Shown here in pieces: positions 1,976 to 57,809 of a DNA stretch of 64,000 bases. The notes below the pieces were generated by a model that was not told where the DNA came from, did no database searches, and worked only from the letters and a program-made list of their open reading frames with translations. The position numbers and the translations under genes are program-made. Location: the IMG/VR virus record IMGVR_UViG_3300050120_000152, positions 124,001 through 188,000 of that record; one strand, given 5' to 3'. Positions within the stretch are counted from its first letter, which is position 1; each line of letters opens with the position of its first letter.

Positions 1976-2389
1976 TTGTCAAAACTCTTGAATTAGAGTG
2001 ATACTCTATGTATAATACGAAAAGGTTTTTGGAACAATTCATCAGGAAAAATCATGAATTTTAAATATATTTTAGTATCATTTACTCTACTATCAATGTC
2101 AACCACTAAAACTGCAACATCTTTTCAGATATACAACTGATGATGAAATTACACCCAGAAAAATTAAATATTGTAGATATTCTTGCTATGCTTTATCTAG
2201 GCTTTATCTACTGGATATGTATCTATGTAGGTATAACTGCTGCATTTACCGGGCAACGGGCTATTCTATCTATGATAGGCCTGTTATTTGGTGCAACATC
2301 TCTCGCTACAGGAAACATGATTAGATATTATTTGTATGCTGGAATTATTACTCTTGACAAATGATATAAATAAGATATACTAGATTTAT

Positions 2390-7507: not shown

Positions 7508-7624
7508 ACGTACATAGCTCAGTCTGGGAGAGCAGCCCCGTAGGAGGGGTAAGTTAAATCAATTTGACGTTTAGGCGTTGCAATGCGATACTGGTCGGTG
7601 GTTCGAATCCATCTGTGCGTACCA
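7508..7624 (+). ncRNA. expanded tRNA-like RNA (Pro-like D arm)
   Basis: ACGTACA/TGTGCGT-A-CCA; GCCCC-GTAGGA-GGGGT; 46-nt two-hairpin variable region; canonical T arm. Confidence 0.7.
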
Positions 7625-24957: not shown

Positions 24958-26109
24958 TCAGTCCGTTGAAGCACATTCGTCTGAAATGTTAAAATCTTTA
25001 TAATGCTTAATAAGCCAAGCTTTGTCATCAAATGGTTTACCAGTATAGTAACTCATAGCTACATTGAACATCATAGGTTCTAGTTCATCTTTAGCCTTCA
25101 AAGCAAATTCTTTGCGCGATAATAAGGAATTATCATGAAAAAATTTAATAGGTGCGTCAAGCTTTTTATATAATTTTCTAACAATTAATTCCATTTCATC
25201 AATACGATTAAGTAAATATATATCATGACTAAAATGAGCCCTTACATCATCACTTAATTCATTAACCACGCACTCAAATAAGTTACGTGGATGAGTTACA
25301 TTGTCTTTCAGTGAATGTAGATTTTTGTACCAGTCACATTTTACTTTAATGTTCATACCATCAACATTGATAACATATCCTTCAATATCTTTCATATTTG
25401 GAATATTGTCTACGAATTCGATCAATTTAACTGGATCAATATCATAAAAATGGTCTTTCACCAAATGCTGAACACAACCAAATTCCTCCATGTCAGATTG
25501 TAACATACTATATGGATAATCCATACCATTCGTCAAATCTCGTGCCGAAAAAATGGTTAAATTGGTTTTTTGATACGGTAAAACAATTCTAAATTTTGCA
25601 TCAGTAAATTCCATACTTACAGAATATCCCTTATGCATCATGTACATGAGGAAATTATGCAACGTTGAGTTTTCTTCCAGCTGAAGAAATTCATTTGCAG
25701 CAATAGCTTGGTCGGATTGTAATGCAGTCTTAGACTTCAAATAAACCATGTCAGCAATAGGAAGTTTATAAGTAGTCATAATACTACCATCCATCTTGTC
25801 CATGATAGATCGAGTCTTGCTGAAATCCAAATTCATTGCCATTTGATTTTCGTTCAAATTAAAAAATTTGCGAGGGGTAAGTGCTGCCAACGATTCATAC
25901 TTATCATCTTTAGTAATGAAAGTAATTCCACGGCATTCCAAAGCCGATGGCTTCAAAAAATCAGTATAGGATGCAAGACGATAAGTGAACACACGGAATT
26001 GAGTACCGTTGAACAGATGGTCAACATAATAAAATGGGCTTTCGTCAGATTCGCATAATGCCATCAAATCTTGATAAAGATCACGGCCATATTGAGTTTG
26101 AACAGTCAT
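24958..26109 (-). CDS. rnlA: T4 Rnl1-like RNA ligase
   Basis: ECRG, KFFNLNE, motif I KMDGS, EGYV, KVKCDWY. Confidence 0.92.
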   Translation of the reverse strand: MTVQTQYGRDLYQDLMALCESDESPFYYVDHLFNGTQFRVFTYRLASYTDFLKPSALECRGITFITKDDKYESLAALTPRKFFNLNENQMAMNLDFSKTRSIMDKMDGSIMTTYKLPIADMVYLKSKTALQSDQAIAANEFLQLEENSTLHNFLMYMMHKGYSVSMEFTDAKFRIVLPYQKTNLTIFSARDLTNGMDYPYSMLQSDMEEFGCVQHLVKDHFYDIDPVKLIEFVDNIPNMKDIEGYVINVDGMNIKVKCDWYKNLHSLKDNVTHPRNLFECVVNELSDDVRAHFSHDIYLLNRIDEMELIVRKLYKKLDAPIKFFHDNSLLSRKEFALKAKDELEPMMFNVAMSYYTGKPFDDKAWLIKHYKDFNISDECASTD

Positions 26110-26650
26110 TGCAATTTCCGATTGTATTAGGGTAAATGAGTTTTTCGTTTTCTATTATAGCATGCTCATGTAACTTATTGTCAAGTGTCTTGGTAGGACT
26201 GATGATATGGGTTACTTTCCATTTATGAATAGCTTCCATATAATCTGATACAATACCACGATGGCATGACCATGGCACGGCTTCGCTACACATATAGGCT
26301 ACTTTATTATCAGTAGCATAACTTTTTAATAATTCGATAGCATGTGCGAATGCTGGATCGTGATAGGCATAATCGGCATAATTACGGAATGCCGGTAATC
26401 GCCATGCTGCATTGTTTCCTGTAGACTTGGGATGTTTCTTACGAAATCCACCAAGTTCTGGCATATGAATGTAGTCAATACCCATCAAAGGTAAAGTATA
26501 TTCAAAATAATCTTTATTAAAATGTGGGAATTTTTTGGAACTTGGAAATGTACGCACGTCAACTAGCATATCAATACGATATGCACTCAACATCTTAACA
26601 AAGGTTCTAAAATCTTTATCAGAGTGGCCTATGGAAAAAATTTCTGGCAT
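26081..26650 (-). CDS. DUF488 family protein
   Basis: IFSIGHS, LVDVRTFPSSK.FPHFN, LGG.R, MCSE..W.CHR. Confidence 0.88.
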   Translation of the reverse strand: MPEIFSIGHSDKDFRTFVKMLSAYRIDMLVDVRTFPSSKKFPHFNKDYFEYTLPLMGIDYIHMPELGGFRKKHPKSTGNNAAWRLPAFRNYADYAYHDPAFAHAIELLKSYATDNKVAYMCSEAVPWSCHRGIVSDYMEAIHKWKVTHIISPTKTLDNKLHEHAIIENEKLIYPNTIGNCNDCSNSIWP

Positions 26651-28450: not shown

Positions 28451-28540
28451 TGGCGGGAGTAGTGGGAGTCGAACCCACGACGTTTAACATTAAATGCATG
28501 GATTTAGAATCCACCGCTCTGACCACTGAGCTATACTCCC
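28451..28540 (-). tRNA. amber suppressor tRNA (anticodon CTA)
   Basis: GGGAGTA/TACTCCC-G-CCA; GTGGA-TTCTAAA-TCCAT; 19-nt variable region; canonical D and T arms. Confidence 0.88.
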
Positions 28541-40523: not shown

Positions 40524-40608
40524 GGCCTCTTGGCGAAACTGGCATACGCGCTTTCCTTAAGAGTAAGTACCTTCGGGTATGCGGGTTCGACTCCCGCAGA
40601 GGCCACCA
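40524..40608 (+). tRNA. trnL: tRNA-Leu(TAA)
   Basis: GGCCTCT/AGAGGCC, loop CTTAAGA, TACC-TTCG-GGTA arm, A73, CCA. Confidence 0.92.
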
Positions 40609-40609
40609 A

Positions 40610-41080
40610 TTATTTGTTTTTATTTTTACCTCTATATGTCAAAGTTTTTGTATGACAATTTGGACATAATAAAGTTAAATTTTCAAGTTTATTATTAGCA
40701 TGATTACCATCAATATGTTCTAATTCTAATGGTATGGGATCACCAAGCCATTCAGTTAAATTACAATTGTAACATTTATGCTGGAAAATTCCTTCAGATA
40801 TAAGTCGTAGTCTAAGACGATTACTATTTACATATTGAACATTTCCTGACAGAATATCAGTCATAGCTATTACAGGTCTTGGAGGATAAGTTTTTCCTTT
40901 AGCATAACCTTGACCTGTGAAATGTGATATATCAATATCATGTTCCTTAAATCGTTTTTGTATGGTAGAATAGTTGCTTCCGTATGGATTCAATTCAAGT
41001 TTTCGTAATACTTCAGCAATAGAAAAAGAATCTTTGACAGCTTCACGCAATTGTTCTGGGGTATGTTTAAAGTTTGACAT
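40610..41080 (-). CDS. HNH homing endonuclease
   Basis: CYNC..LELEHIDGNHANNKLENLTLLCPNCHTKT; late promoter at 41104. Confidence 0.9.
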   Translation of the reverse strand: MSNFKHTPEQLREAVKDSFSIAEVLRKLELNPYGSNYSTIQKRFKEHDIDISHFTGQGYAKGKTYPPRPVIAMTDILSGNVQYVNSNRLRLRLISEGIFQHKCYNCNLTEWLGDPIPLELEHIDGNHANNKLENLTLLCPNCHTKTLTYRGKNKNK

Positions 41081-41179
41081 AGTAACACTCTCTGTAATAT
41101 ACCTATTTATATGTATTACAAAGTTATGAATAAAAAGATTGACAAGTGATATAAATAACAAATATAATTACTACCTTGT

Positions 41180-41321
41180 GGGCGTATGGGGGAATTGGTA
41201 GACCCGGCAGACTCATTGAAGTCTTCTAGAAATAGAAGATTTTGTAAAATAAATTTAATAGTTTATTTTACAAAATCTGCTTCCGAAAGGAGTCCCGGTT
41301 CAAGTCCGGGTATGCCTACCA
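41180..41321 (+). tRNA. trnL: tRNA-Leu(CAA) split by a 57-nt insert (41215-41271)
   Basis: Removing the insert gives an 85-nt Leu cloverleaf with GCAGA-CTCAAAA-TCTGC. Confidence 0.85.
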
Positions 41322-41371
41322 AACAAATTCATGGTCTTCCCAAACCATGTCTTATGATGTAAGATATACAT

Positions 41372-41449
41372 CGGAGTGTAGCTCAGTCTGGCTAGAGCAT
41401 CGCGTTTGGGACGCGAGGGTCGCAGGTTCGAATCCTGTCTCTCCGACCA
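41372..41449 (+). tRNA. trnP: tRNA-Pro(TGG)
   Basis: TCGCG-TTTGGGA-CGCGA, CCA. Confidence 0.93.
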
Positions 41450-41788
41450 ATTCAAATTAAATGTTGACAATGACGTTTAATAATGTATAATTAGCTACAT
41501 GTAGTGGAACTCGTGACTCTGGTCACGTAAAGGATTGAAGCGAGAGCTTCTAAGGACTTGGAAATAGGGTATCGAATCCCTGCACCCCATGAGGGGGTGT
41601 TCGTCTAAGATAGGACACCAAGATTGCATTAGAAGGTAGCCATTCTGGATGAATGGAGAAAATAACACGAGGCGTCAACTGTACACGCCTACTCGCAAAG
41701 CTAGACATTAGTAAAAATGCACTCGCAAAGTTTTAAAAGTGTTGACAAAGAATAGAAACATGGTATTCTAGTTAACTCAGCAAGACAC

Positions 41789-41863
41789 GGGGAAGTACCT
41801 CAGAGACTAGAGGACTGGCATATGAGCCAGAAGTCGTAGGTTCAATCCCTACCTTCCCCACCA
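41789..41863 (+). ncRNA. tRNA with a 6-nt anticodon loop (AUAUGA)
   Basis: Perfect cloverleaf GGGGAAG/CTTCCCC-A-CCA, but CTGGC-ATATGA-GCCAG. Confidence 0.75.
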
Positions 41864-41866
41864 AAT

Positions 41867-43690
41867 TAAGATGGTGTAAAATCAGCGCAGAGTTGATCAC
41901 CTAGATGATAAGGGCTTACAGAACTGTTATAGGTTCTACACATATCATCCATCTTATAATAAAGCATGTGGATGAGTTTCCCGAAAGGGTTGTGAGTCGC
42001 CAGTCCAGAATTACGAATGGGCCGTTATACTAGACTAACGGAATTACCACTGACGATAATCGTTTGCTACGATTTGAAACATTCTTAGGAATGTATGGTA
42101 TAGCACCTTGAAGGCGAAAGTTTTCATGGTCAGGATAAGGTATCGCAAGATGCTAAAAGGGTTTGCGCCCACAAGCGCCCCACCATAGTAATATGGCCCA
42201 ACTATACAAGCTGGTAGGACACTAAGCGGAATGCTTAGGATTCATCATATGGTGGATATAGATCAGCACTCAATGGTAACGAAAACCACATTAGAGCCAA
42301 TCGGTGAAATGTGAGAGGTTTAGCAGCCTCTAGTTACATGCAACATTGGCCTGAAGTATGTTAAACCGGTAGTGGTTCCAGTATGAGGGTTTGCGCCTAA
42401 ATGCGAAGCTGCAATGTTAATGGGTGCGAACGCTCATGAAACATACTGTGAATGTATCCTTAGCGGGAGAAAAGCAGAGAAGGTCGGGTTTGAAGCTGTC
42501 GGGATGGAGAAAGTTTCATTAATAGCATTTCGCTACACATCCTTTTAGATAAATACATATATCTAGGAGATTGTGAATGAATTTTTGTCATTACGGTTGT
42601 GGAAAAGAAGGTCTGTTCTATTCTGAATCATCAAAGCGTTGGAGATGTTGCAAAAATCCAGCATTATGTGATGGTAGGAAACGTGAAGTCAGTACAATGA
42701 ATATAAATGGAGAGTCCCATAAAAGACTCAAAATGAAGTATAAAAATTGTCCTGAATGTGGGTTGAAGGTATCTGCACCAACATTAGCAGCACATGTACG
42801 TAAATGTACACGAAAACTTACTTGCATAGTATGTGGCAGTGAACATAAGCGTGATCAGGCAATAACATGTTCTGATAAATGTCGTAGTATATTAACTTCT
42901 GAAACAATAAGAGGACAATATGCTGATGGTAGTAGATCACCTAGAAAAGCCAAGAAAACGTCTGTAATATATGACGAACACGTTTTTGATAATGATGTAG
43001 AAGTTCTAGCATACAAATTGTTAGTTTCAATGAAAGTTGACAACTTGCAGCATGAAAGTGTTAGAATTCCATATGTCTATGAAGGATTAGACCATACATA
43101 TTTTCCTGATTTTACTTACGATGATGGTAACCAAAAATGTTTGGTTGAAATCAAAGCTGGTGGTAGAATGAACATGAGCAATTATGCTAAACTGCGCGCC
43201 GCTGAATCGTTAGGATATAAAATCATACTGTGGGATAGAAATGTTATTAAGAAGCTTTCTTCTAATAAAGACTGATGGACAAACGAACCTGCTCGACCTT
43301 AGTGGGTAAACTAGCCTTGATTGGCACTTTGAATATTATCAAAATAACGAAAAATGCAAAGTCAGGTTCGGTTACAGTTGAAAATAGCATAATGCTCCAC
43401 CGAAAGGAATGGAGTCATGCAAAAGCTCGCAAGGCTAATGTATGTTGGTAAAGAACTGCAAGTATGGGTGTAGCCACCCTTAGCTGCTCGCAAGGCAGGC
43501 TGAATGGGAAATGCCGAATAGACTGTAGCGACAATGGAAACGCCACCATTTAAAATAAGGCTGCTATGATGATGTACATATTTGTGGTCGAAAGACTAGA
43601 GTATGTGGACAAGTCGGGAAAAGGCTCGCAAAGCCCTATAATCCGCACGAAAGCATTATCACGAAGAGTGTAATCTCAACTCGACATATT
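41867..43690 (+). ncRNA. giant ornate ncRNA (GOLLD-like), about 1.1 kb, interrupted by an ORF
   Basis: About 680 nt + 410 nt ORF-free, more than 20 hairpins, many with GAAA/GCAA loops; starts directly after a tRNA; ends GAGT-GTAATCTCA-ACTC. Confidence 0.6.
42577..43275 (+). CDS. zinc-finger plus PD-(D/E)xK endonuclease (TnsA-N-like), putative homing endonuclease
   Basis: CxxC motifs; YFPDF..LVEIKAG; ATAAATA and AGGAG upstream. Confidence 0.75.
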   Translation: MNFCHYGCGKEGLFYSESSKRWRCCKNPALCDGRKREVSTMNINGESHKRLKMKYKNCPECGLKVSAPTLAAHVRKCTRKLTCIVCGSEHKRDQAITCSDKCRSILTSETIRGQYADGSRSPRKAKKTSVIYDEHVFDNDVEVLAYKLLVSMKVDNLQHESVRIPYVYEGLDHTYFPDFTYDDGNQKCLVEIKAGGRMNMSNYAKLRAAESLGYKIILWDRNVIKKLSSNKD

Positions 43691-57703: not shown

Positions 57704-57809
57704 GGGTCGGTAGCTCAGTTGGTAGAGCAGGAGACTTATTCAAGTATCTTCAATGAGGATACTTCTATTAATCTCTTGGTCGCGGGTTCGAACCCCGCCC
57801 GACCCACCA
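57704..57809 (+). tRNA. trnK: tRNA-Lys(TTT) split by a 30-nt insert (57738-57767)
   Basis: Body resembles enterobacterial tRNA-Lys; removing the insert gives 76 nt with loop CTTTTAA. Confidence 0.88.

What the first reader, a model, noticed from the sequence alone, without database searches (positions are those of the whole stretch)
41180..41321. tRNA-Leu(CAA) with a 57-nt two-hairpin intron
Insert = ATTG + AAGTCTTCTA-GAAA-TAGAAGATTT hairpin + a second AT-rich hairpin (GTAAAATAAA/TTTATTTTAC) that can extend to 14 bp and sequester the exon AAAA. It looks like the Lys intron with an extra module. It is far too short to be the cyanobacterial-type Leu group I intron. A late promoter lies just upstream.
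Basis: seen in the sequence. Interest (0 to 1): 0.75.

Follow-up and report, generated by a model that had tools for sequence, protein, structure and literature searches.

The report
Interrupted leucine tRNA in jumbo phage
A giant bacteriophage carries an otherwise perfect leucine tRNA gene split in its anticodon by a conserved 57-base two-hairpin insert that fits no known intron type, one of at least three such genes in this phage. Whether and how the insert is removed is untested.

Summary
Window 41180-41321 is a tRNA-Leu(CAA) gene with a precise 57-nt insert (41215-41271) inside the anticodon, at 34/35 or, because of a repeated A, 35/36. The insert folds into two hairpins, and the second extends to 14 bp over exon AAAA.

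An intronless orthologue with near-identical exons and promoter (L022) fixes the boundaries. A second relative (L014) carries the same insert: 56/57 bases identical, against 31/35 in the exon and 67% in the neighbouring gene. So the insert is neither an assembly artefact nor decaying junk.

The genome is a 340-kb DTR phage from peat. It holds two more such genes, Lys(UUU) with a 30-nt insert and a CAU tRNA with a 73-nt insert, both at 34/35. The cultured Salicola phage SCTP-2 has an unannotated Asn(GUU) case.

The insert is not a group I intron, not an archaeal bulge-helix-bulge intron and not any Rfam ribozyme. The phage lacks EndA, RtcB and Tpt1 but encodes a T4 Rnl1-type tRNA-repair ligase.

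My best reading is a Lak-megaphage-type "enigmatic" tRNA intron, cut out by an unidentified endonuclease and resealed by Rnl1. Splicing itself is untested: no public RNA run holds the locus. An unspliced decoy RNA and a selfish insertion remain live rivals.

The parts
41139..41168 (+). Sigma-70-type promoter (TTGACA, 18 nt, TATAAT; 12/12 matches). Its spacer holds TATAAATA at 41150-41157. It ends 11 nt before the tRNA start.
   Evidence: a homologous promoter with a conserved TAAATA box occurs in relatives L014, L015 and L022
41180..41214 (+). 5' exon of tRNA-Leu(CAA): acceptor 5' strand, D arm, anticodon-stem 5' strand, and C32 U33 C34.
   Evidence: 10 bases of its acceptor strand plus a 25-nt stretch of its D and anticodon arms (one D-stem base left open, as it differs in the relatives) match exactly in >120 cellular and viral contigs, all uninterrupted
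41215..41271 (+). 57-nt intervening sequence. The equivalent placement 41216-41272 is allowed by the repeated A. It sits inside the anticodon at 34/35 or 35/36.
   Evidence: absent from orthologue L022, and 56/57 identical in L014
41219..41242 (+). Hairpin H1: 10 bp (one G-U pair) with a GAAA loop. Its 5' strand can alternatively pair with the exon bases AGACT.
41240..41275 (+). Hairpin H2: core 41244-41271, extendable to 14 perfect bp that sequester exon A35-A38. The only difference from L014 lies in its loop.
41272..41321 (+). 3' exon: A35 A36 A37 A38, anticodon-stem 3' strand, long variable arm, T arm, acceptor 3' strand, A73 and encoded CCA.
40610..41161 (-). Free-standing HNH endonuclease gene between tRNA-Leu(UAA) and the interrupted tRNA-Leu(CAA). 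It is present in some relatives and absent in others.
40524..40608 (+). Uninterrupted tRNA-Leu(UAA), a paralogue that can also read UUG.
57704..57809 (+). tRNA-Lys(UUU) with a 30-nt insert (57738-57767) at 34/35. The insert is ATTC plus a 10-bp hairpin plus CTA, and is the sister element of the Leu insert.
24958..26109 (-). T4 Rnl1-type RNA ligase with the tRNA-specific C-terminal domain. It is the candidate sealing enzyme. A DUF488 gene (26081-26650) overlaps its start.

Best explanation
This is a functional tRNA-Leu(CAA) gene of a 340-kb jumbo phage that infects a bacterium. Its anticodon is interrupted by a 57-nt structured intervening sequence. The sequence belongs to a small family of hairpin inserts that sit at anticodon position 34/35 in at least three tRNA genes of this phage. 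It is the same kind of short, unclassifiable, highly conserved tRNA intron first noted in Lak megaphages.

Proposed mechanism, as four steps (only the first rests on sequence evidence):
1. The gene is transcribed from its own strong sigma-70-type promoter (inferred from sequence).
2. The insert folds into two hairpins on top of the anticodon stem (predicted).
3. A protein endonuclease, not yet identified and either phage or host, cuts 3' of N34 and 5' of N35 (inferred).
4. The two tRNA halves, held together by the cloverleaf, are rejoined in the anticodon loop by the phage's T4 Rnl1-type ligase. This ligase's known job in T4 is to seal anticodon-loop breaks. A phage AAA_33 kinase matching the kinase half of the phage polynucleotide-kinase family would help if the ends need healing (inferred).

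The near-identity of the insert across diverged relatives also suggests that it is, or recently was, mobile.
For: 1. Precise interruption of an intact tRNA.
2. The intronless orthologue L022 is 73/85 identical to the predicted spliced product. It shares the promoter and reads CTCAAAA exactly where the insert is removed.
3. The intron-bearing relative L014 has 56/57 identical intron bases, with the single change in a hairpin loop. The comparison values are 31/35 in the 5' exon, 24/30 upstream, 317/471 in the adjacent gene and 47/85 in the adjacent Leu(UAA). Fisher p = 0.01 against exon plus upstream, and 4e-8 against the gene.
4. The exons keep every helix despite divergence: the D-stem pair changes G-C to C-G, and the variable stem is fully replaced yet still paired.
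5. Two further inserts at 34/35 occur in the same genome, and the Lys insert shares the 5' motif ATT(G/C)AAGT plus a 10-bp hairpin.
6. The cultured phage SCTP-2 has a 45-nt anticodon insert in tRNA-Asn.
7. Both phages encode Rnl1. This phage's copy also carries the T4_Rnl1_C domain, and this phage has an AAA_33 kinase matching the kinase half of the phage polynucleotide-kinase family and an Rnl2-type ligase.
8. Precedent: conserved, presence/absence-polymorphic introns in Lak phage tRNAs (PMC6784885).
Against: - No RNA evidence of any kind. The public RNA runs hold only unrelated tRNA-Pro-like fragments.
- No endonuclease candidate was identified. EndA, RNase III, RtcB, Tpt1 and the PNK3P phosphatase are all absent from the phage.
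- Rnl1 is common in jumbo phages whether or not they have such inserts (PMC7824862), so its presence is weak support.
- All three interrupted tRNAs have an uninterrupted phage tRNA able to read the same codons, so the phage may not need them spliced.
- Only two intron-bearing alleles exist, and one is truncated at the intron end, so structure covariation cannot be tested.
- The splice-site geometry is not uniform across the four examples.
Confidence: 0.45

Rival explanations
1. The insert is never spliced. The RNA is a stable tRNA-like decoy. It keeps a cell-like tRNA body but carries a hairpin at the anticodon-loop site where anticodon nucleases cut. It would soak up host anticodon nucleases or other tRNA-targeting defences, while the phage's own divergent tRNAs do the decoding.
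For: - The interrupted tRNAs have cell-like exons. 10 bases of the acceptor strand plus a 25-nt stretch of the Leu D and anticodon arms match exactly in >120 bacterial contigs, including Chitinophagaceae and Alphaproteobacteria.
- The second, uninterrupted phage tRNA-Lys(UUU) is only 52/78 identical to the interrupted one.
- Every interrupted tRNA has an uninterrupted back-up.
- The inserts sit at 34/35 in the anticodon loop, where anticodon nucleases are known to cut (my own knowledge).
- The promoter is a strong consensus one.
- T4 itself encodes tRNA-like stable RNAs of unknown function in its tRNA cluster: rnaC has a T arm and an acceptor-like stem.
Against: - It does not explain why three different tRNAs carry related inserts whose removal restores perfect 7-nt loops.
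- It does not explain why relatives have the uninterrupted gene at the same locus.
- No nuclease target is known for Leu(CAA).
- A decoy needs no conserved 5' insert motif.
Confidence: 0.25
2. The insert is a selfish DNA insertion that has inactivated a redundant tRNA gene. It spreads between phages by recombination, possibly because it breaks the recognition site of a tRNA-gene-targeting homing endonuclease such as the adjacent HNH and so gives immunity. It is not removed from the RNA.
For: - The insert is more conserved than its exons between two diverged phages, which points to recent transfer.
- The insert is polymorphic for presence or absence.
- A free-standing HNH gene lies 19 bp from the tRNA and is itself polymorphic.
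- Homologous HNH genes sit in the tRNA clusters of T5-like and T4-like phages.
- The codons are covered by other phage tRNAs.
Against: - It is single-copy in the genome, with no target-site duplication and no terminal inverted repeats.
- L014 has the insert but no HNH gene between the two Leu tRNAs.
- The exons show no decay and keep all helices.
- The cleavage site of the HNH enzyme is unknown.
Confidence: 0.15
3. The insert is a new, very small self-splicing or self-cleaving RNA. It would use the alternative pairings of its first hairpin with the 5' exon (AGACT/AGTCT) and of its U-run with the 3' exon AAAA as guide helices, like P1 and P10 of group I introns.
For: - The minimum-energy fold of the whole precursor forms exactly these exon-intron pairings.
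- The Lys insert can form the analogous 5' pairing, with an ATTC tetraloop at the splice site (sequence inspection).
- Every base of the insert is conserved except one loop base.
Against: - At 30-73 nt the inserts are far below any known self-splicing RNA.
- No Rfam ribozyme matches even at E <= 10.
- There is no group I model hit in the genome.
- The exon does not end in U and the intron does not end in G.
- The CAU-tRNA insert lacks the pairing.
Confidence: 0.07
4. The insert is an archaeal- or eukaryal-type intron removed by a bulge-helix-bulge splicing endonuclease.
For: It is short and lies in the anticodon region of a tRNA.
Against: - No bulge-helix-bulge can be drawn. The four bases upstream of either splice site are not complementary to the required intron bases (hand check).
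- The position is 34/35, not 37/38.
- No EndA domain is found in the phage.
- The promoters are bacterial sigma-70 type.
- The relative with a known host infects a gammaproteobacterium.
Confidence: 0.02

Closest known systems
'Enigmatic' tRNA introns of Lak megaphages (Devoto et al. 2019, PMC6784885)
   Same: Both are short inserts in the anticodon region of huge-phage tRNAs that Rfam cannot classify. Both are present in some relatives and absent in others, and nearly identical wherever present. In both cases splicing has never been demonstrated.
   Different: The phage lineage and habitat differ: peat, sigma-70-type promoters and a T4-like repair ligase, against a Prevotella gut phage using code 15. 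Here the position can be fixed at 34/35, and two of the inserts share a 5' motif and hairpin module. The tRNAs affected also differ: Leu, Lys and a CAU tRNA here, against Phe, Gly, Thr and Tyr in Lak phages.
Cyanobacterial/plastid tRNA-Leu(UAA) group I intron
   Same: The host gene family is the same (tRNA-Leu) and the insertion point is the same, between anticodon bases 34 and 35. Exon-intron guide-like pairings are possible.
   Different: The insert is 57 nt against more than 200 nt. It has no P3-P9 core, no U at the exon end, no terminal G and no Rfam RF00028 match. The anticodon is CAA, not UAA.
Archaeal/eukaryal protein-spliced tRNA introns (bulge-helix-bulge, EndA plus ligase)
   Same: Both are short, non-catalytic and structured. 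The proposed cut-and-ligate logic is the same, with the tRNA body holding the halves together.
   Different: There is no bulge-helix-bulge and no EndA. The position is 34/35 instead of 37/38, and the host is bacterial. The available ligase is an ATP-dependent Rnl1 rather than RtcB or Trl1.
T4 anticodon-loop repair (PrrC cut of tRNA-Lys healed by Pnkp and sealed by Rnl1)
   Same: The same class of ligase, including its tRNA-binding C-domain, is encoded here. The ligation it performs, resealing a broken anticodon loop next to the wobble base, is exactly the last step needed for splicing.
   Different: In T4 this is repair of host-inflicted damage with nothing removed. Here two cuts and loss of 57 nt would be required, and no nuclease is known.
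T4 stable RNAs rnaC/rnaD in the tRNA cluster
   Same: These are phage tRNA-cluster transcripts with tRNA-like parts (T arm, acceptor-like stem) and no known decoding role. They are a precedent for the unspliced-RNA rival.
   Different: rnaC is not a clean tRNA interrupted at the anticodon, and no uninterrupted orthologue defines an insert.

Membership tests
tRNA (type II, leucine) | Complete cloverleaf after removal of the insert: 7-nt anticodon loop, long variable arm, A73, G18G19 and a T-loop TTCAAGT. | tested here: met
   ARAGORN calls tRNA-Leu(caa) with the intron and calls the virtual spliced 85-mer as a normal tRNA-Leu(CAA). It aligns with the uninterrupted Leu(CAA) genes of SCTP-2 and L022.
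Group I intron (tRNA-Leu type) | Conserved catalytic core P3-P9, normally more than 200 nt. | tested here: not met
   The insert is 57 nt. No RF00028 match in the locus at E <= 10 or anywhere in the 340-kb genome at E <= 1.
Group I intron (tRNA-Leu type) | U as the last exon base (G-U pair in P1) and G as the last intron base. | tested here: not met
   The exon ends in C34 (or A35), and the intron ends in C (or A).
Group I intron (tRNA-Leu type) | Insertion between anticodon positions 34 and 35. | tested here: met
   34/35 fits the Leu gene and is unambiguous for the Lys and CAU genes. The Leu gene alone also allows 35/36.
Archaeal/eukaryal endonuclease-spliced tRNA intron | Bulge-helix-bulge (or relaxed hBH) motif presenting both splice sites. 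| tested here: not met
   Hand check on the sequences and folds. The required 4-bp helix between exon bases upstream of the 5' site and intron bases upstream of the 3' site cannot form in the Leu or Lys gene.
Archaeal/eukaryal endonuclease-spliced tRNA intron | A splicing endonuclease (EndA/Sen, PF01974) available. | tested here: not met
   No PF01974 match in the phage genome. The host is unknown, so its gene content could not be tested.
Lak-type huge-phage tRNA introns | A short unclassifiable insert in the anticodon region of a tRNA of a phage larger than 200 kb. | tested here: met
   340,344-bp DTR phage; 57-nt insert with no Rfam family.
Lak-type huge-phage tRNA introns | Same intron nearly identical across diverged genomes, with some relatives lacking it. 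| tested here: met
   L014 is 56/57 identical. L022, L015 and SCTP-2 are uninterrupted.
Any intron | The intervening sequence is removed from the RNA and the exons are joined. | not testable with these tools
Small self-cleaving ribozymes (hammerhead, twister, pistol, hatchet, HDV-like) | Match to the family's covariance model or conserved core. | tested here: not met
   No such family appears at E <= 10 over 41100-41400.
Miniature transposable element (MITE / IS-derived) | Multiple copies, terminal inverted repeats and a target-site duplication. | tested here: not met
   Single copy in the genome. There are no flanking direct repeats beyond one A. The two hairpins are internal, not terminal inverted repeats of each other.

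The most novel reading that the evidence does not exclude
Bacteriophage-infected bacteria possess a third, so far undescribed way of splicing tRNAs. Short hairpin introns placed between anticodon bases 34 and 35 would be excised by a protein endonuclease that measures from the anticodon stem. The halves would be rejoined by the phage's T4 Rnl1-type 'repair' ligase, so the classical T4 tRNA-repair enzymes double as a splicing machine. The introns themselves would be mobile elements that spread between phage tRNA genes.
Probability: 0.3. Interest if true: 0.85.

Novelty: new member of a known kind. Interest (0 to 1): 0.6.

Why it matters
Bacterial and phage tRNA genes are textbook-uninterrupted apart from self-splicing group I introns. 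Short introns that are neither group I nor bulge-helix-bulge have been reported in only one paper I could find (Lak megaphages), and their mechanism is unknown.

This locus adds four things:
- An exactly defined example, bounded by an intronless orthologue.
- Evidence that the insert is under constraint or is mobile.
- A small family of related inserts at one anticodon position.
- A cultured phage, Salicola phage SCTP-2, in which splicing can be tested directly.

If the inserts are spliced, that reveals a new RNA-processing pathway and a second role for phage RNA-repair enzymes. If they are not spliced, they point to tRNA-shaped decoy RNAs in phage-host conflict.

The finding also matters for annotation. 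Standard bacterial tRNA finders miss these genes, or miscall them: the Lys gene was called tRNA-Ile(aat).

Tried and rejected
RNA evidence:
The RNA runs X4 and X5 and run X7 (library kind not on record) hold only tRNA-Pro-like fragments of other organisms. Only the DNA run X2 holds the phage, and it is identical.

Searches for more intron alleles:
- The intron 22-mer gave 0 hits in metagenome contigs.
- Exon 19- and 25-mers gave 0 hits in viral contigs.
Every one of the 132 metagenome and viral stretches reads on uninterrupted (131 through to the anticodon stem; the last runs off its contig after CTCAAA), and the genome pattern itself spanned the uninterrupted anticodon loop.
- The Lys hairpin 23-mer gave 0 hits.
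- The spurious 58-aa ORF across the tRNA is in the protein collection but has no homologue.
- HNH homologues number more than 3,000 but none is close.
- Two neighbour-protein scans of IMG/VR found no relative.

Other checks:
- An RF00005 scan of six other large phages (KP13-7, LR756502, fHe-Yen9-04, pEa_SNUABM_12, XacN1, Cronus) showed no over-long tRNA among the 150 best hits. The 40 weakest hits were not shown, and the model misses inserts of 57 nt or more.
- ARAGORN with forced introns on tRNA clusters gives mostly chimeras of neighbouring tRNAs and was not used.
- DUF488 next to Rnl1 was considered as an end-healing enzyme. It has no PDB relative, it is absent from SCTP-2, and I found no literature link to RNA repair, so it stays unassigned.
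- A guide RNA elsewhere in the genome complementary to the insert was sought; only chance-level matches of 19 nt or fewer turned up.
- An internal promoter or terminator in the insert was sought and none was found.
- Host identification from tRNA similarity failed: the best cellular match is only about 83%.

Full report
WHAT IS THERE. The window is bases 124001-188000 of a 340,344-bp virus record with direct terminal repeats and 34.7% G+C, assembled from a peat metagenome. It carries about 40 tRNA genes. Standard ARAGORN and Rfam find nothing at 41180-41321. ARAGORN with intron search calls tRNA-Leu(CAA) there with a 57-nt intron. The exons are 41180-41214 and 41272-41321. Joined, they give an 85-nt sequence that ARAGORN calls as an ordinary tRNA-Leu(CAA). 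It has a complete cloverleaf, a long variable arm, A73 and an encoded CCA. Because an A is repeated at both borders, the insert lies either between C34 and A35 or between A35 and A36.

THE FOLD. The insert is ATTG, then hairpin H1 (41219-41242, 10 bp, GAAA loop), one T, then hairpin H2 (41244-41271). The anticodon arm plus insert folds with z = -6.1 against dinucleotide shuffles, and the full precursor with z = -5.2. The minimum-energy fold of the whole precursor breaks the anticodon stem. It pairs exon AGACT with intron AGTCT, and pairs the 3' exon with the intron U-run. With the anticodon stem enforced, nearly isoenergetic folds keep H1 and H2 on top of it.

COMPARATIVE EVIDENCE. The 139-aa protein just upstream has homologues on several metagenomic contigs.
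- L022 (protein 54% identical) has tRNA-Leu(UAA) followed by an uninterrupted tRNA-Leu(CAA). This gene is 73/85 identical to the predicted spliced product, sits behind a homologous promoter, and reads CTCAAAA in the loop. That fixes the insert borders independently of ARAGORN.
- L014 (protein 54% identical) has the interrupted gene. Its 5' exon is 31/35 identical and its insert 56/57. The single difference is in the H2 loop, and the contig ends at the last intron base. By comparison, the 30 nt upstream are 24/30 identical, the neighbouring gene 317/471 and the neighbouring tRNA-Leu(UAA) 47/85. Fisher p is 0.01 for the intron against exon plus upstream, and 4e-8 against the gene.
- L015 and Salicola phage SCTP-2 have uninterrupted, more divergent Leu(CAA) genes in the same Leu(UAA)/Leu(CAA) neighbourhood.

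So the insert is polymorphic for presence or absence, and where present it is more conserved than anything around it. The exons of the interrupted alleles keep all helices: the D-stem pair changes G-C to C-G, and the variable stem is wholly replaced but still paired.

A FAMILY OF INSERTS. The same genome has tRNA-Lys(UUU) at window 57704-57809 with a 30-nt insert, and a CAU-anticodon tRNA at genome 119832-119981 with a 73-nt insert. Both are unambiguously between positions 34 and 35. The Lys insert is ATTC plus a 10-bp hairpin plus CTA. It shares ATT(G/C)AAGT and the hairpin module with the Leu insert, so 'the Lys intron with an extra module' is a fair description. In all three, seven unpaired bases (C32, U33, N34 plus four intron bases) precede the first hairpin. 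In the Leu and CAU genes the last hairpin ends exactly at the 3' border. SCTP-2, a cultured 440-kb phage, has an unannotated tRNA-Asn(GUU) with a 45-nt insert at 35/36 that contains a T-arm-like hairpin.

WHAT IT IS NOT.
- Not group I. The insert is 57 nt, there is no RF00028 hit in the locus or the genome, the exon does not end in U and the intron does not end in G.
- Not a bulge-helix-bulge intron. The required helix cannot be drawn, the position is 34/35, the phage has no EndA, and the promoters are bacterial.
- Not a known small ribozyme.
- Not a repeated element. It is single-copy, with no target duplication.
- Not an assembly artefact. An independent DNA run and an independent relative both carry it.

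HOW IT MAY WORK. The phage lacks RtcB, Tpt1, the PNK3P phosphatase and RNase III. It does encode a T4 Rnl1-type ligase with the tRNA-specific C-terminal domain, an Rnl2-type ligase, and an AAA_33 kinase that matches the kinase half of the phage polynucleotide-kinase family. SCTP-2 also has Rnl1 and no RtcB. From established T4 biology, Rnl1 reseals tRNA anticodon loops cut next to the wobble base. That is exactly the joining step that splicing at 34/35 would need. I therefore favour cut-and-rejoin splicing, with an unidentified endonuclease and Rnl1 as ligase. All steps after transcription are inference. Rnl1 is widespread in jumbo phages (PMC7824862), so this support is weak.

RIVALS. Each interrupted tRNA has an uninterrupted phage tRNA that can read the same codons. 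Their exons are cell-like: 10 bases of the acceptor strand plus a 25-nt stretch of the Leu D and anticodon arms match exactly in more than 120 bacterial contigs. This fits an unspliced decoy for anticodon nucleases, or a tolerated selfish insertion. The latter could be linked to the adjacent free-standing HNH endonuclease, whose relatives populate phage tRNA clusters and which is itself present or absent among relatives. T4's own tRNA cluster encodes tRNA-like stable RNAs of unknown function. A tiny self-splicing RNA that uses the exon-intron pairings is possible but unprecedented at this size.

KNOWN OR NEW. Full-text searches found only the Lak megaphage paper describing such introns, which it calls 'enigmatic'. 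Those introns are likewise highly conserved and polymorphic, and no mechanism is known. I therefore file this as a new member of that known but unexplained kind. It adds exact borders, a fixed 34/35 position, a shared module between two inserts, and a culturable example.

THE PROMOTER. A perfect TTGACA-18-TATAAT lies at 41139-41168. A TAAATA box at that place is conserved in the relatives' promoters. Which polymerase form uses it cannot be told from sequence.

Noticed in passing
window 57704-57809: tRNA-Lys(UUU) with a 30-nt hairpin insert at 34/35 (57738-57767). Standard ARAGORN miscalls it tRNA-Ile(aat), while Rfam spans it as one tRNA. Its exons differ from the phage's second, uninterrupted Lys(UUU), which is 52/78 identical.
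   Followed up: partly
genome 119832-119981 (outside the window, about 4 kb upstream of it): A CAU-anticodon tRNA with a 73-nt, three-hairpin insert at 34/35, directly after an uninterrupted CAU tRNA. From memory, its T arm resembles that of bacterial tRNA-Ile2, so it may be an AUA reader rather than a Met tRNA.
   Followed up: partly
L159 (Salicola phage SCTP-2, MF360958.1:298729-298850): An unannotated tRNA-Asn(GUU) with a 45-nt anticodon insert (35/36) that contains a T-arm-like hairpin, CAGG-TTCAACT-CCTG. A second, weaker candidate lies at 320118-320245. The phage is cultured, so this is testable.
   Followed up: partly
window 41864-42570: About 700 nt with no ORF of 50 aa or more, in a phage of 34.7% G+C. 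The fold z-score is -5.9 (20 shuffles) and there is no Rfam match. This may be a large structured RNA.
   Followed up: partly
window 41464-41740: A perfect sigma-70 promoter (41464-41491) drives a non-coding stretch. Its motif GGATTGAAGCGAGAGCTTCTAAGGACTTGG is conserved downstream of Leu(CAA) in L015 and L022. There is no Rfam match and the fold z-score is -2.6.
   Followed up: partly
window 41789-41863: A tRNA with a good Rfam score (54 bits) has a 6-nt anticodon loop (ATATGA), so ARAGORN gives a 2-base anticodon. Distant relatives (L005-L009) carry a tRNA with an 8-nt loop (anticodon 'aatt').
   Followed up: no
window 28451-28540 (- strand): A tRNA with anticodon CTA, which would read the amber codon. 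It has the best Rfam tRNA score in the window (66 bits), and ARAGORN labels it 'Pyl'. It is a possible suppressor tRNA. ARAGORN with intron search also proposes a TTA-anticodon tRNA-like gene with a 28-nt insert at 7508-7624, which is less convincing.
   Followed up: no
window 26081-26650 (-) and 24958-26109 (-): A DUF488 gene (E = 2e-27) overlaps the start of the T4 Rnl1-type ligase gene, suggesting one operon. DUF488 has no solved relative by sequence and is absent from SCTP-2.
   Followed up: partly
window 40610-41161 versus L014, L015, L021, L022, L023: The HNH gene between the two Leu tRNAs is present in the window, L021 and L023. It is absent from L014 and L022, and L015 retains only about 30 nt of its 5' end. 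This is a separate insertion/deletion polymorphism beside the intron polymorphism.
   Followed up: partly
L014:3640-3731: The contig of the intron-bearing relative stops exactly at the last intron base. That could be a chance coverage break, or a branch in the assembly graph at the 3' junction, meaning more than one sequence follows the intron in that sample.
   Followed up: no
window 2354-2381 and genome 117293-117320: Other RNA-gene promoters share the same design, TTGACAA(A/G)TGATATAAATA...: a T4-late-like TATAAATA box inside a sigma-70-type spacer.
   Followed up: partly
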